Of a DNA stretch of 64,000 nt, positions 3,401-47,500 are shown piece after piece. The notes beneath the pieces are model-generated. The model was not told where the DNA came from and did no database searches. It worked only from the letters and a program-made list of their open reading frames with translations. The DNA is from Ostrea edulis (lineage: Eukaryota), in contig NC_079164.1 in assembly GCF_947568905.1 (NCBI RefSeq), positions 36,766,001-36,830,000 on the forward strand, in the 5' to 3' direction. A program made the position numbers and the translations under genes. Each line of letters opens with the position of its first letter. Position 1 is the first letter of the stretch.

Positions 3401-6400
3401 TAGCAGCCACCAATTGTGGGACTCTAATCATACAATCTGTTCCTCTCCTATCTCCATATTTCCACTATGATATGAGATGCATTACACCTTCACGTTTACA
3501 TGTACAACATCATTTTATCACCTGCTTACAAAAATCTCTACTTTCAAACCAGTGTGCATTCCTTAAATCATCACTAAGATTTGTTCAAGCCTCCTAACAC
3601 CTTGATATACTGTGAACTCATTGCGTCACCTGTTGAATTAATTGTGTCACCTGTTGAATTAATTGTGTCACCTGTTGAATTAATTGTGTCACCTGTTGAA
3701 TTAATTGTGTTACCTGCTAATTAATTGTTTTACCTGGCTGTTTACTGCTGGCTCAGTGATGGACCAGGTCTGTGAATCCAGGTCAAAACTAAAGTACAAA
3801 ATACAATTTTAAAACAATTTACATCAGAGAGTATTCAAAATATCAAAGATGTAATAGGACAGTAACATCAACACAATACCATAATGCTGAACAACCAACC
3901 ACTTCGATATCACAGTCTAAATCTAACCAATTAGGTTCAAGAAAACAGCCCCTGGTTATTTTGTAGCTGTTGCGTCTTGTTGACTTACATGTACCACAGG
4001 GGCTAAGCCCGTTTGGGCTCGATCTCTGTGATACCATAAATCTATATTTATGGTATCACAGACTTCGGGCCCAAACGGGCTTAGCCCCTGTGACGTCACA
4101 TGTACATGCATAAAAAGTTGCAATAAATCTTACAGAACAAGGACACTTTTCAAACATCATACATGTATATACAAGTATATAATGCTTCGTATACACAAAA
4201 TGTAATGACATCAACAGATAATGTCCTGTATACACGAAATGTGATGACATCAATAGATAATGCTTCATATACACAAGATGTAATGACATCAACAGATAAT
4301 GCTTTGCATATACATGTACAAAATGTGACGACATCAACAGATAATGCTTTGCATATACATGTACAAGATGTGATGACATCGACAGATAATGTCCTGTATA
4401 CACAAGATGTGATGGCATCTGACATTTTGTAAATGTACATGATAGATTGGAAATAACAAAGAATACCAATGTTAACAAATTCTTACAACGAATTTAATAT
4501 GTATGTGCAAACAAATGAAAACATGTGACTTTAAAATCATTAAATCATTGGACATCGTCTATATTTACTAAATGACAATGTCTGACTTGTGGAATTCATT
4601 GGGCAGTGTCTATATTTATTAAATGACAATGTCTGACTTTTGTAGATCATTGGACAGCGTCTATATTTATTTAATGACAATGTCTGACCTGTGGAGTTCA
4701 TTGGGCAGTATCTATATTTATTAAATGACAATGTCTGACCTGTGGAGTTCATTGGGCAGCGTCTATATTTATTTAATGGCAATGTCTGACCTGTGGAGTT
4801 CATTGGGCAGTATCTATACTTATTAAATGACAATGTCTGACCAGTGGAGTTCATTGGGCAGTATCTATATTTATTAAATGACAATGTCTAATCTGTGGAG
4901 TTCATTGGGCAGCATCTATATTTATTTAATGACAATGTCTGACCTGTGGAGTTCATTGGGCAGTATCTATATTTATTTAATGACAATGTTTGACCTGTGG
5001 AGTTCATTGGGCAGTATCTATATTTATTAAATGACAATGTCTGACCTGTGGAGTTCATTGGGCAGTATCTATATTTATTAAATGACAATGTCTGACCTGT
5101 GGAGTTCATTGGGCAGCGTCTATATTTATTAAATGACAATGTCTAATCTGTGGAGTTCATTGGGCAGTATCTATATTTATTAAATGACAATGTCTGACCT
5201 GTGGAGTTCATTGGGCAGTGTTTGGCCTGTTGCTCCACCAAATACGTAAAGGTGTCTGTCAAAAGCTACCATAGTATGTCCATATCTCTTCTCTGGTGGG
5301 AGCGGGGCACCTCTAAGAATATGCTCTGTGGAAATCTTTGTCCATCTGACAGAAAAACAACAAAATAGTGAACCCTTATTCCATTGCAATCTCATACATC
5401 AACATGTGCATGACTTATGTTGAACATTTATTACAAACATTTATGAATTTATCACCATACCTTAACCATGTATAACTGTAAGTTATCCATAAAACAGAAA
5501 TAAATATAGTGCTCACTCATTTTCCTTGAACTTAAATTGGAAGAGATGGTTTGTAATTTTAGCTCCACTCTGCCCAGAAAACACAAACATGGAATCCCTA
5601 GCCACTGCCAGAGCAAAGTTGCAGCAGGTGGGAGGAATATTTCCTCTCTGTTCTACCTACAGTGTATAAATAGACAGTGAGAATAACACAACAGGTGGGA
5701 GGAATATTTCCTCTCTGTTCTACCTACAGTGTATAAATAGACAATGAGAATAACACAACAGGTGGGAGGAATATTTCCTCTCTGTTCTACCTACAGTGTA
5801 TAAATAGACAGTGAGAATAACACAACAGGTAGGAGGAATATTTCCTCTCTGTTCTACCTACAGTGTATAAATAGACAGTGAGATTAACACAGCAGGTGGG
5901 AGGAATATTTCCTCTCTGTTCTACCTACAGTGTATAAATAGACAGTGAGAATAACACAACAGGTGGGAGGAATATTTCCTCTCTGTTCTACCTACAGTGT
6001 ATAAATAGACAGTGAGAATAACACAACAGGTAGGAGGAATATTTCCTGTCTGTTCTACCTATAAATAGACAGTGAGAATAACACAACAGGTGGGAGGAAT
6101 ATTTCCTGTCTGTTCTACCTATAAATAGACAGTGAGATTAACACAACAGGTGGGAGGAATATTTCCTCTCTGTTCTACCTACAGTGTATAAATAGACAGT
6201 GAGATTAACACAACAGGTGGGAGGAATATTTCCTGTCTGTTCTACCTATAAATAGACAGTGAGAATAACACAACAAAATACTTGTTCTGTGTGTCTGCCT
6301 GTACATGTCCCACTATTACTTCAAGAAATTATTTCGTGACACTTTATTTTCACATTTTCACAAATCAGTATACAGTAAAACACACTTATAATGAACATGT

Positions 6401-44595: not shown

Positions 44596-47500
44596 ATGGC
44601 TGAGTAAGACAAGACTTTTGATATTTATCGTATCTATTTAAGTAATACTCATTTTTGTAAATGATTTAATACATAATGATAAATATTGAAAACTTACAGT
44701 GCATTTCTAGATATTTATATGTAAGCTATACGTTCTTGGAAAAACGGTATCCTACAGTCCGAGTTTTATGAACGTGATGTGCTCTAAGTTGATTGACGGC
44801 TGACTCAAACCGCACTTTATTGTATCATCTAGCCGAAAATTCCCTTAAATAAATTATATATTGTAATTCATATTATTAGTGTCTTATATAGTTATGAAAT
44901 TAATTTCTTGTAAATGTTATAATATTAATGATAAAAGTTCAAAGTTTGCATTTTTACTATTAAAAACATTGACAAAATATTTGGAAAATTTGCAAGAAAT
45001 CATGATATCTTTTTATGTATTGGTATTGAATGATGATTGGGGGGGGGGGGGGGGGGCTTATTCAGTCATCAATACCTATGCATAAAATCTGGAAACTATA
45101 ACTGTGAAAGTAATGTACTTATTGTATATTCAATGCAAAGTGGTTGAAAATGTTTTTTAATAAGTACTTCATGGCTAAATAATTGCAGCGAAATAAAGCG
45201 TAAAGATGCTCAGATGAGAGCCACCATCAACCAGAAACTGGTGGAGACAGGTGAACGTGATAGGTGAGTAACAGACTTTAACTAGAACCTGGTGGAGAGA
45301 GGTGAATGTGATGGGTCAGTAACAGTTGAACCTGAACCTGGAGGAGACAGGTGAATATTATAGGTCAGTAACAGACTTTAACTAGAACCTGGAGGAGACA
45401 GGTGAATGTGATGGGTCAGTAAAGGAGACTGAGACTCATCATAAAAATAATTACATACTAACTTTTATCTCTCATGTATTTCCAACTTTGTTCTGGAGAG
45501 AGCATATTTGTTTTGAAATGGCAACATTTGACAATAAGCAATTTTAAATTGTTCTATTAGAATTCATATGCACGCTTAGCTAATTATCTCTGCCTAACAA
45601 TACTACTACACTGTATATTATTAGCAATAAAGTTTGTGATTCTAATTGTAGATTAAAGGAATTATTGAGAACCAGACTGATAGAGTGTGGCTGGCGAGAT
45701 CAACTCAAGCAGCACTGTAAAGGTACTAAATAATCTCAGCGACAGACAAAACTTCATTCAAGTCCATATTGTAATAGAGGAAATCTAAATTGTAATGGAG
45801 GAAATCTAAATTGTAATAGGGGAATGTTCCTCTTTTGTAATCGAACAATGATGATTGTAAAATATGTTTTGTACCTCATATATCACTAAATGTGGTCTGA
45901 GCGAATAATAAAAACTTGTAACACGTAAGACTTGGAAATCTAAATAGATATATATCTTAAATAGTTAACCATCTTCCATGTGTGTACCCGGTACTATTGA
46001 ATGATATTTATCTGGAATTTAATTTCCAAGTTGAAATAAAGGGAACTGAGGAAAGTAATAAAATATTGGAAATCATACTCAGAATTCTGTGTATTCATCC
46101 ATTATAGTATTTAGGTCTTTGTCATATTTATAAGTAGTTGAACAGAGGTAAGCATACAGTATGTGATTATTATTTTTTTTGCATCTTTTGTGCTGATAAT
46201 ACGCAATGATGTGCAGCTAGGTGTTATGAAAATTTGTCTGGACACTTAGGTCTGCTATCAGGACATTAGATGTCAGAAAATAAACATTTATTATTTATAA
46301 ATTATCATTGTAATATCCCATTCCCTAGTACTCTGTTGGTCAATGAATTGTAACAGTGGCTGGTTTCTTCAATGATAACTGATAAAATTTCACATATTGA
46401 ACTTCTTCAAAGAAATTCATGTTCCAATTTCAACCAAACTGGGCACAAAGCATTTATGGGTAAAGAGGATTCGAGTTTATATTCAAATGAAGGGCCACAT
46501 CCTCTTTAAAGGATAAATTAAATGAGAATTATGAGAAATTGGATATTATATTTCAAAAATCTTCTCATGAACCACTGTGCTAATCTCAGTCAAACTTCAG
46601 AAAAAGTATTCTTGGGTGAAGAGGGTTCAAGTTTATTCAAATGATGGACAACACTATTTAAAAAAAAAAAAACATGAAAAATTGGAGGTTCTGATTTAAA
46701 AATCTTCTCAAGAATCACTGAGCCAATTTAGCCTTTGAGCATGGCACAAGACAACCTTAGGTAACACTTTTCAAAATTTCTACATGGGGTAGGTAAGAAA
46801 TATTGAAAATGGGATGGGTGAGCTTTGTCAAAATTCTCCTCTGGAACCACTGGATCTAGAATTACAAAACTTTGTCAGAATCATCATCAATAATGTATAG
46901 ATTTGATCAAGTTTGTTCAAATGATAACCCATAGGCTTAGAATGAGGCCACAAGGTGGGGATGGGTGGCGAGGGGGATGCTAAACATTCCAGAGGAATAT
47001 GTAAGGAAACCATATTGAAATCTTCTCGGGAACAGTAGAACTATAGTATGTCACCTGAAATGGAAAGCACTCTCATGCAGACTCCGTTTAATTTAAATTG
47101 CTTTCATGTGTGCTTATATTGATGCTTATTGTATCCAAGTTTAAACCATGCCAGTTGAAAATAGACCTCCTCTGGTGAGGATTTTAAGGGTATCTCTGCA
47201 GATACTTTACCCCGACAACCTTCTTTATGTGTAAGAAGGTGGAATTTAATAATTTATCCCCAAAAAACGTTTTGAGTGTACATGTATTCAAATGGTGTAT
47301 TGCCACCATCACACTCCTTTTATTTCCCCTTTTCTTCCCATGAGTTTGTGAAGAGAGAAGGGCTTTTAATAAGCCCTTGTGTGATGAAATATGTATGTAT
47401 GGTTCTGTGTAACATGTGAGGCAGTTTTAATACACACACACACACCCATGCTGGTGTGGGTTGAATTTAATTCTATTTCAAATCACCGGTTGTATAAACC

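What the first reader, a model, noticed from the sequence alone, without database searches (positions are those of the whole stretch)
3621..45421. Recurrent tandem amplification of exon-intron junctions: arrays of decoy splice sites in three conserved genes
Seen: at least seven tandem duplications use a real splice junction as their unit (LZTR1 exon 9 and 8 donors, exon 7 acceptor; DHX9 exon 6 acceptor, exon 8 and 18 donors; ENY2 exon 2 donor). Two more arrays end 12 and 22 nt from DHX9 exons. The functional site is always the copy next to the exon, and the array always grows into the intron. In each frame I translated, using a decoy gives a stop or frameshift. Known: single junction VNTRs and intron gain by AG|GT duplication are described. 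Inference: this density (7 of about 90 splice sites) suggests a junction-seeded slippage process, and copy number could act as a heritable dial on unproductive splicing and NMD.
Basis: partly seen in the sequence, partly recalled or inferred. Interest (0 to 1): 0.85.

Follow-up and report, generated by a model that had tools for sequence, protein, structure and literature searches.

The report
Minisatellites that copy splice junctions
Seven short tandem-repeat arrays in three neighbouring housekeeping genes of an invertebrate really do repeat the gene's own exon-intron boundary, a kind of repeat known from a few human genes, and their apparent preference for splice sites is probably what random duplications in once-tiny introns produce.

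Summary
I built gene models for LZTR1 (minus strand), DHX9 (29 coding exons, intact 1253-aa ORF) and ENY2. All seven named arrays contain a real junction: LZTR1 exon 9 and 8 donors and exon 7 acceptor, DHX9 exon 6 acceptor and exon 8 and 18 donors, and the ENY2 exon 2 donor. The exon-proximal copy gives the conserved reading frame. Every decoy gives a stop or a frameshift.

With present intron lengths, 7 junction arrays compare with about 2 expected (P about 0.002, on a window chosen post hoc). In a related species the same LZTR1 introns are 95-321 nt and hold no arrays. If introns were about 200 nt when the arrays arose, chance predicts 7.2. So ordinary minisatellite birth in short introns, followed by intron inflation, is sufficient. 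A junction-biased process is not excluded.

The kind is known from human F7, CBS, LMNB2, PDGFA and 6-16. The density here is unusual. First readers of this scan noted the same pattern in at least 20 other windows of this genome; those notes are unchecked.

The parts
3613..3736 (-). 21-nt x6 array starting at the LZTR1 exon 9 donor (exon 3788-3734). True site CAG|GTAAAA; decoys GTAACA, then GTGACA.
4558..5219 (-). 51-nt x13 array; the unit is the last 21 nt of LZTR1 exon 8 (5345-5199) plus donor GTCAGA plus 24 further intron nt. Six decoys are identical to the true 9-mer. The nearest decoy and one other have lost GT.
5625..6275 (-). 67/60-nt x10 array; the unit is the acceptor (..CACTGTAG) plus the first ~32 nt of LZTR1 exon 7 (5656-5517). 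The functional copy is the last one, next to the exon.
20123..20265 (+). Two-copy echo: 45 nt (polypyrimidine tract, AG and 27 nt of DHX9 exon 6, 20239-20285) repeated 98 nt upstream. The decoy reads SFIAEMKF then a stop.
22926..23241 (+). 32-nt x10 array; the unit is the last 8 nt of DHX9 exon 8 (22844-22933) plus the donor. True site GTAAGT, copies GTAGGT. Degenerate copies run on to about +460 in the intron.
32592..32968 (+). 33-nt (some 45-nt) array of ~11 units; the unit is the last 20-32 nt of DHX9 exon 18 (32529-32623) plus AAG|GTAAGA. Nine intact decoys. A stop follows 3 codons past the true junction.
45229..45422 (+). 51-nt x3.8 array; the unit is the last 35 nt of ENY2 exon 2 (45189-45263) plus GTGAGT and 10 further intron nt. 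Decoy donors are GTCAGT.
14919..15462 (+). 21-nt x26 array ending 12 nt before the DHX9 exon 3 acceptor (15475). The unit holds TTTTAG, but the flank in register is not similar to the unit, so it is not junction-derived.
36648..37560 (+). 33/39-nt x25 array filling most of DHX9 intron 22 (1070 nt) and ending 23 nt before exon 23 (37584).
16087..16344 (+). 36-nt x7 array starting 22 nt after the DHX9 exon 4 donor (16064). It is the 5' tandem region of a dispersed SINE-like element (16331-16503), not junction sequence.
12424..42177 (+). DHX9: 29 coding exons and an intact 1253-aa ORF, obtained only when the exon-proximal sites are used.
475..9734 (-). LZTR1 exons 1-11 (Kelch domain and start of BTB). 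The gene continues beyond the window start.
45189..48314 (+). ENY2 coding exons 2-5.

Best explanation
These are ordinary junction-reiterating minisatellites, the same kind as the human F7 intron 7 VNTR.

Proposed sequence of events (inferred):
- This lineage makes many 20-100-nt tandem duplications inside genes.
- The introns concerned were short, about 100-300 nt, when the duplications arose. A unit of that size often straddles an exon-intron boundary, or lands within a few tens of bases of one, by chance.
- A duplication that straddles a boundary leaves the mRNA unchanged as long as the spliceosome keeps using the copy next to the exon. The extra copies then lie in the intron, where the array can expand by slippage or unequal exchange.
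- Arrays that would extend into the exon are removed by selection.
- Expansion, together with later insertions, inflates the intron. Today the array looks like something seeded at the edge of a long intron.

The decoys are by-products. They are either silent or, if used, give transcripts with early stops.

Shown: the anatomy, the consequences for the reading frame, the absence of the arrays from a relative, and the short introns in that relative. Inferred: which site is used in vivo, the short ancestral lengths outside the 11 introns compared, and neutrality.
For: - Anatomy and intact ORFs only with the exon-proximal sites.
- In a related species (exon DNA about 83% identical) LZTR1 introns 6, 8 and 9 are 321, 98 and 95 nt and hold no arrays. 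This is seen in three independent contigs. The window has 1031, 1410 and 2222 nt at the same introns.
- DHX9 intron 12 is 96 nt in a relative against 863 nt here.
- Over 11 comparable introns the relative averages 216 nt and the window 700 nt. Introns without arrays are about the same length in both.
- Arrays account for 651 of the 710 extra nt in LZTR1 intron 6, and 882 of 1312 in intron 8.
- With 200-nt introns, chance predicts 7.2 junction-spanning arrays and 11.2 spanning-or-near, against 7 and 11 observed.
- The exon share of the unit ranges from 3/21 to 35/51, as expected for random unit boundaries.
- Junction and deep arrays are equally young, at 82-100% matches.
- Small repeats are not drawn to junctions.
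- Two other species carry independent events of the same kind.
- Precedents in human genes, where the upstream-most donor is chosen (PMC1557585).
Against: - With present or array-subtracted intron lengths the excess is real: 7 observed against 2.0-2.5 expected, P=0.0015-0.006.
- Three junction events lie in introns that are long today even without the array (LZTR1 intron 9, DHX9 introns 5 and 8). Their lengths at the time of duplication are unknown.
- A more distant species (L002) has long introns at the same LZTR1 positions, so the ancestral state of introns 6, 8 and 9 is not settled by parsimony.
- Junction arrays have more copies than deep ones (median 10 against 2.9, P=0.04). Neutrality does not predict that.
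- The same LZTR1 exon 8 donor was hit independently in two species.
- There is no RNA evidence on which site is used.
Confidence: 0.6

Rival explanations
1. A mutational bias. Minisatellite birth or expansion is truly favoured at or near exon-intron boundaries in this lineage. One possible cause is that conserved exon edges are the only well-matched DNA between very divergent haplotypes. Another is a transcription- or chromatin-linked effect. Under this reading junctions act as seeds and introns grow from their ends.
For: - 7 junction arrays against 2.0-2.5 expected, and 11 spanning-or-within-25-nt against 3.0-3.7, with present or array-subtracted lengths.
- All arrays of at least 7 copies are at or within 25 nt of a junction; copy number is higher than in deep arrays (P=0.03-0.04).
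- Independent duplications at the same LZTR1 exon 8 donor in a second species, plus an exon 6 acceptor copy there.
- A junction array in DHX9 of a distant species.
- At least 20 first-reader notes of the same pattern elsewhere in this genome; these are unchecked.
Against: - The excess vanishes with 200-300-nt introns, which is what the relative has.
- The window was picked post hoc from 792.
- Small repeats show no bias.
- The near arrays are not junction-derived, and two of them are carried by a dispersed element.
- Unit boundaries show no fixed relation to the junction.
- No mechanism is evidenced.
Confidence: 0.2
2. A function. The decoy arrays are kept by selection. They might act as a heritable dial on unproductive splicing and NMD. 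Or the donor arrays might act as clustered U1-binding sites that help exon recognition or suppress premature polyadenylation in AT-rich introns.
For: - Many decoys are intact and identical to the true site: 6 of 12 at LZTR1 exon 8, 9 at DHX9 exon 18, 6 of 9 at the LZTR1 exon 7 acceptor.
- Every decoy leads to a premature stop.
- In the human 6-16 and CBS genes the proximal pseudo-sites are used.
Against: - The arrays are absent from the relative.
- Other species have different events at the same site.
- The arrays are young, at about 90% identity.
- The genes are unrelated housekeeping genes.
- Decoys are weakened in three arrays, and the nearest LZTR1 exon 8 decoy has lost GT, which looks like drift or disarmament rather than maintenance.
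- The F7 pseudo-sites are silent (PMC1557585).
- Acceptor arrays do not fit the U1 idea.
Confidence: 0.08
3. An assembly artefact: the arrays are mis-assembled or over-expanded repeats.
For: None specific. Tandem arrays are error-prone in assemblies, and copy numbers may be inexact.
Against: - The units carry ordered variants and higher-order structure.
- Public DNA runs hold 75-81% of the sampled words of 4900-8900, which includes parts of two arrays. These runs may be the assembly's own data.
- The same kind of array appears in independent assemblies of other species.
Confidence: 0.02

Closest known systems
Human F7 intron 7 VNTR (37-bp minisatellite whose first unit spans the exon 7-intron 7 boundary; Borensztajn et al. 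2006, PMC1557585)
   Same: The first unit is a few exon bases plus the donor and intron start. There are 5-9 identical donor copies, the array lies in the intron, and the authentic site is the upstream-most one. This is the architecture of the LZTR1 exon 8 and 9, DHX9 exon 8 and 18 and ENY2 exon 2 arrays.
   Different: F7 is a single locus in a vertebrate, its silence has been shown by minigene work, and it is known to be polymorphic. Here there are seven events in three adjacent genes, up to 35 exon nt in the unit, and no RNA or population data.
Other human junction-reiterating minisatellites listed in PMC1557585: CBS intron 13, LMNB2 (100-bp unit covering most of an intron), PDGFA intron 4 (81-bp unit), interferon-induced 6-16
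   Same: The minisatellite reiterates the exon/intron junction. LMNB2 and PDGFA use only the authentic donor. In LMNB2 the array makes up most of the intron, as in DHX9 intron 22 and LZTR1 introns 6 and 8 here.
   Different: In 6-16 and CBS two proximal pseudo-sites are used; whether that happens here is unknown. All of those listed reiterate a donor. Here two events reiterate an acceptor plus the exon head, upstream of the true site.
Intron gain by tandem duplication of an AGGT-containing exon segment (Hellsten et al. 2011, PMC3265369; potato RdRp, PMC4974935)
   Same: A tandem duplication creates extra splice sites from the gene's own sequence.
   Different: In those cases the new intron is made from the duplicate and is absent from relatives. 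Here the introns are old: the same positions occur in relatives. Only one junction is copied.

Membership tests
Junction-reiterating minisatellite (F7 intron 7 type VNTR) | Head-to-tail array of units of roughly 10-100 nt | tested here: met
   TRF scores 192-1128; periods 21, 32, 33, 51, 51 and 67 nt with 3.8-13 copies. The DHX9 exon 6 event has only two copies, and the similarity is partial.
Junction-reiterating minisatellite (F7 intron 7 type VNTR) | The terminal unit spans an authentic exon-intron boundary, so the splice-site sequence recurs in the intron | tested here: met
   Exon boundaries come from homology-guided models giving an intact DHX9 ORF, from LZTR1 and ENY2 exons matched to PDB chains 9mey_B and 4dhx_B, and from the same boundary in ORFs of at least 10 other species. 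The units contain 3-35 exon nt.
Junction-reiterating minisatellite (F7 intron 7 type VNTR) | The mRNA is made with the exon-proximal (authentic) copy; the pseudo-sites are silent or minor | tested here: inconclusive
   Only the proximal copies keep the conserved frame, and every decoy gives a stop or frameshift.
Junction-reiterating minisatellite (F7 intron 7 type VNTR) | Copy number varies between individuals (VNTR) | not testable with these tools
   No reads could be laid. Array ORFs are not in the protein collection.
Intron gain by tandem duplication of an AGGT segment | The intron is new (absent from relatives) and both its splice sites come from the two copies | tested here: not met
   Introns at the same positions exist in relatives. 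Each array copies one junction only, and the other splice site is unique sequence.
Tandem exon duplication (mutually exclusive exons) | A whole exon with both splice sites is duplicated and the copies are alternatively included in frame | tested here: not met
   The units hold one junction and 3-35 nt of exon. Inclusion gives stops.

The most novel reading that the evidence does not exclude
In this lineage, minisatellite birth or expansion is truly biased towards exon-intron boundaries. Splice junctions across the genome would then seed arrays of perfect decoy sites, on both the donor and the acceptor side, and these arrays would be a main route of intron growth. The genome would hold very many natural 'F7-type' experiments on how the spliceosome chooses among identical sites, with a possible load of NMD-targeted transcripts.
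Probability: 0.2. Interest if true: 0.8.

Novelty: new member of a known kind. Interest (0 to 1): 0.5.

Why it matters
Each array is a natural competition experiment: up to 12 donors, or 9 acceptors, with the same sequence as the real site, placed 20-600 nt away, in essential genes that still encode intact proteins. If the pattern holds genome-wide, as many unchecked first-reader notes suggest, this species would offer very many such cases. These would include acceptor-side arrays, which have hardly been studied. They could be used to test the rules of splice-site choice (proximal-site scanning against exon definition) and to measure how much unproductive splicing a genome tolerates.

The finding also shows a concrete route of intron growth. 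In LZTR1, about 100-320-nt introns became 1-1.4 kb, largely through copies of their own boundary.

For annotation, such arrays are traps for gene predictors.

If the neutral reading is right, the lesson is methodological: repeats that 'hug' exons need a null built on ancestral intron lengths, not present ones.

Tried and rejected
There is therefore no evidence on site usage or polymorphism.
- A search with the 222-aa ORF running through the DHX9 exon 18 array found nothing, so other copies of the array could not be found through proteins.
- P0157, the closest LZTR1 exon 8 ORF, had no contig on record. A cluster member did.
- Walking 10 kb upstream of LZTR1 in the L002 species to reach DHX9 found no DHX9; synteny is not kept there.
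- A relaxed scan suggested that the 'near' arrays reach the junction. An in-register comparison of flank and unit rejected this for DHX9 exons 3 and 4 (P=0.83 and 0.96).
- Small tandem repeats (period 6-12) were tested as an independent sign of a junction hot zone: 2 observed against 1.4 expected.
- Genes beyond 48.5 kb could not be modelled from ORFs, so they were not used as an unselected control.
- Literature searches for a genome-wide description of junction-spanning repeats, in oysters or in general, found none. Run and assembly accessions are not cited in any held paper.
- The organism was not identified. Ten pieces, a chromosome over 93 Mb and 35% GC suggest a bivalve such as a flat oyster, but this is a guess.
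Full report
**What is in the window**

The window is AT-rich (about 35% GC) and rich in minisatellites.

- DHX9 is on the plus strand. One exon found full-length homologues. tblastn and a splice-aware joining of neighbouring matches gave 29 coding exons, 12424-42177. They concatenate into an uninterrupted 1253-aa ORF that is 56% identical to the 1268-aa homologue P0049. 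One intron is GC-AG.
- LZTR1 is on the minus strand. Its exons 1-11 (9734-475) give a continuous Kelch-to-BTB reading frame. Exon 8 matches the solved human LZTR1 Kelch domain, 9mey_B, at E=2.6e-38, and the match ends exactly at ...TLPNELH. The gene runs off the window start.
- ENY2 exons 2-5 lie at 45189-48314. Exon 2 matches human ENY2, 4dhx_B, at E=5e-8.

Written in register, the units contain exon sequence plus the splice site.

| Junction | Position | Unit and copies | Exon nt in unit | Notes |
|---|---|---|---|---|
| LZTR1 exon 8 donor | exon ends 5199 | 51 nt x13 | 21 | donor GTCAGA |
| LZTR1 exon 9 donor | exon ends 3734 | 21 nt x6 | 3 | array starts at CAG\|GTAAAA |
| LZTR1 exon 7 acceptor | exon starts 5656 | 67/60 nt x10 | about 32 | unit holds ..CACTGTAG; the real copy is the last |
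| DHX9 exon 8 donor | 22933 | 32 nt x10 | 8 | true GTAAGT, copies GTAGGT |
| DHX9 exon 18 donor | 32623 | 33 nt x about 11 | 20-32 | AAG\|GTAAGA |
| ENY2 exon 2 donor | 45263 | 51 nt x3.8 | 35 | |
| DHX9 exon 6 acceptor | 20239 | 45-nt copy 98 nt upstream | 27 | missed by TRF, found by my ungapped scan |

The arrays 12 and 22 nt from DHX9 exons 3 and 4 are as described. Two more lie 23 and 25 nt from exons 23 and 14.

I scored sites with a position weight matrix built from the window's own 41 donors and 41 acceptors:
- Six of the 12 LZTR1 exon 8 decoys, nine DHX9 exon 18 decoys and six LZTR1 exon 7 decoy acceptors equal the authentic site.
- The decoys are weaker at LZTR1 exon 9, DHX9 exon 8 and ENY2.
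- The nearest LZTR1 exon 8 decoy has lost its GT.
- Every decoy gives an in-frame stop within 3-45 codons, or a frameshift.

That the exon-proximal copy is the one used rests on reading frame and homology only.

**Is the coincidence with junctions more than chance?**

Among 19 intronic arrays or echoes in 41 modelled introns (37.0 kb), 7 span a junction and 4 more lie within 25 nt. I placed seeds evenly over intron sequence and allowed any overlap of up to one unit with an exon.

| Intron lengths assumed | Expected spanning | Observed | P | Expected spanning or near | Observed | P |
|---|---|---|---|---|---|---|
| Present lengths | 2.0 | 7 | 0.0015 | 3.0 | 11 | 3e-5 |
| Array-subtracted | 2.2 | 7 | 0.003 | 3.4 | 11 | 7e-5 |
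| 300 nt each | 5.2 | 7 | 0.23 | 8.0 | 11 | 0.12 |
| 200 nt each | 7.2 | 7 | 0.63 | 11.2 | 11 | 0.63 |

The window was chosen post hoc from 792, so the nominal P values overstate the case. Small repeats (period 6-12) show no pull towards junctions: 2 observed against 1.4 expected.

**What relatives show**

ORFs containing LZTR1 exon 8 from many species all end at the same boundary, so the intron is old.

A related species, with exon DNA about 83% identical, is represented by several independent contigs.
- There LZTR1 introns 6, 8 and 9 are 321, 98 and 95 nt and contain no arrays. The window has 1031, 1410 and 2222 nt.
- Introns that carry no array in the window are about the same length in both species: 132 against 125, 118 against 111, 310 against 436, and 171 against 247 nt.
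- DHX9 intron 12 is 96 nt in a relative against 863 nt here.
- Over 11 comparable introns the relative averages 216 nt and the window 700 nt. Arrays supply 651 of the 710 extra nt in intron 6, and 882 of 1312 in intron 8.

So the arrays are young and lineage-specific. The introns they sit in were probably short, and the arrays are a large part of why those introns are long now.

A 20-100-nt unit duplicated in a 100-300-nt intron will often straddle a boundary. That is sufficient to give the observed numbers.

Caveats:
- A more distant species (L002) has long introns at these positions, so the ancestral lengths are not proven.
- Three junction events sit in introns that are long today apart from the array.

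**Hints that a bias may still exist**

- L002 carries an independent 158-nt x2 duplication (96 exon nt plus 62 intron nt) at the same LZTR1 exon 8 donor. It also has a degenerate copy of the exon 6 acceptor plus exon head 583 nt upstream.
- A distant, GC-rich species has an 81-nt x3 array made of 49 exon nt plus GTATGT in DHX9.
- In the window, junction arrays have more copies than deep ones (median 10 against 2.9, P=0.04).
- First readers of this scan noted the same pattern in at least 20 other windows of this genome. Those notes are unchecked.

Points against a bias:
- The near arrays are not junction-derived.
- Two of them are the 5' tandem region of a dispersed SINE-like element.

**How it most likely works**

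Tandem duplication or slippage creates a second copy of a segment that contains the boundary. If the spliceosome keeps using the copy next to the exon, the mRNA is unchanged and the other copy is simply intron. The array can then grow by slippage or unequal exchange. Growth into the exon is selected against.

For donors this matches the experimentally shown upstream-most choice at human F7 intron 7. It also matches the classical duplicated-site experiments cited there. For acceptor arrays the rule is inferred here and has not been tested.

**Comparison with what is known**

The kind is known: minisatellites whose first unit spans an exon-intron boundary occur in human F7, CBS, LMNB2, PDGFA and 6-16. 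It is not intron gain by AGGT duplication, because the introns pre-exist. It is not tandem exon duplication.

What I did not find described is such density: 7 of 82 junctions here, in three adjacent housekeeping genes. I also found no description of acceptor-side arrays.

**Limits**

Decoy usage, NMD and copy-number polymorphism are therefore untested, and those places were not sent to any search tool afterwards. The organism is not identified.

**Verdict**

The arrays are new members of a known kind. A junction-specific process is possible but not required, and the regulatory 'dial' is unsupported so far.

Noticed in passing
window 2961-3140, 6370-6551, 13938-14112, 16331-16503, 21152-21306, 25858-25990, 27774-27928: A ~175-nt dispersed SINE-like element sits in many introns. 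Two copies lie 22 and 25 nt downstream of DHX9 donors (exons 4 and 14). Each carries its own 5' tandem region (36 nt x7; 48 nt x2) beginning TACAGTNAAAC.
   Followed up: partly
window 28855-31274: DHX9 intron 16 is a GC-AG intron (ATAGAG|GCAAGT ... TTTCAG|GCC).
   Followed up: partly
L002:10040-10414 and L002:5449-6181: In another species the same LZTR1 exon 8 donor carries an independent 158-nt x2 duplication (96 exon nt plus 62 intron nt, 85% identical). A degenerate copy of the exon 6 acceptor plus exon head lies 583 nt upstream of the real exon, with a palindromic insert in between.
   Followed up: partly
L006:8794-9033: A distant GC-rich species has an 81-nt x3 array made of 49 nt of a DHX9 exon tail plus a GTATGT donor. 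Further arrays start 7 and about 17 nt after two other DHX9 donors (14291-14466, 10784-10890).
   Followed up: partly
L005:3867-10222: In this species the exon equivalent to DHX9 exon 12 is split by an extra ~6.1-kb intron between ...IIVTQ and PRRISAV. This is intron presence/absence variation between species.
   Followed up: no
window 12752-12939: A 36-nt x5 array 217 nt inside DHX9 intron 1 has a unit holding a perfect donor-like TTTTAC|GTAAGT. It is not derived from the exon 1 donor, and its origin is unknown.
   Followed up: no
window 36648-37560 and 5625-6275: The unit of the large array in DHX9 intron 22 and the unit of the LZTR1 exon 7 acceptor array share the 12-mer ACACTGTAGGTA. The intron 22 unit also shares TGTTTGAAC with the DHX9 exon 18 unit. 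This may be coincidence.
   Followed up: no
window 9734-12424: LZTR1 and DHX9 are head to head, 2.7 kb apart. In the L002 species no DHX9 lies within 10 kb upstream of LZTR1.
   Followed up: partly
window 42036-42158: A coding 24/48-nt repeat encodes the RGG/GGYG tail of DHX9 in the last exon. It starts at the exon 29 acceptor, but it is an exonic protein repeat, not a junction array.
   Followed up: partly
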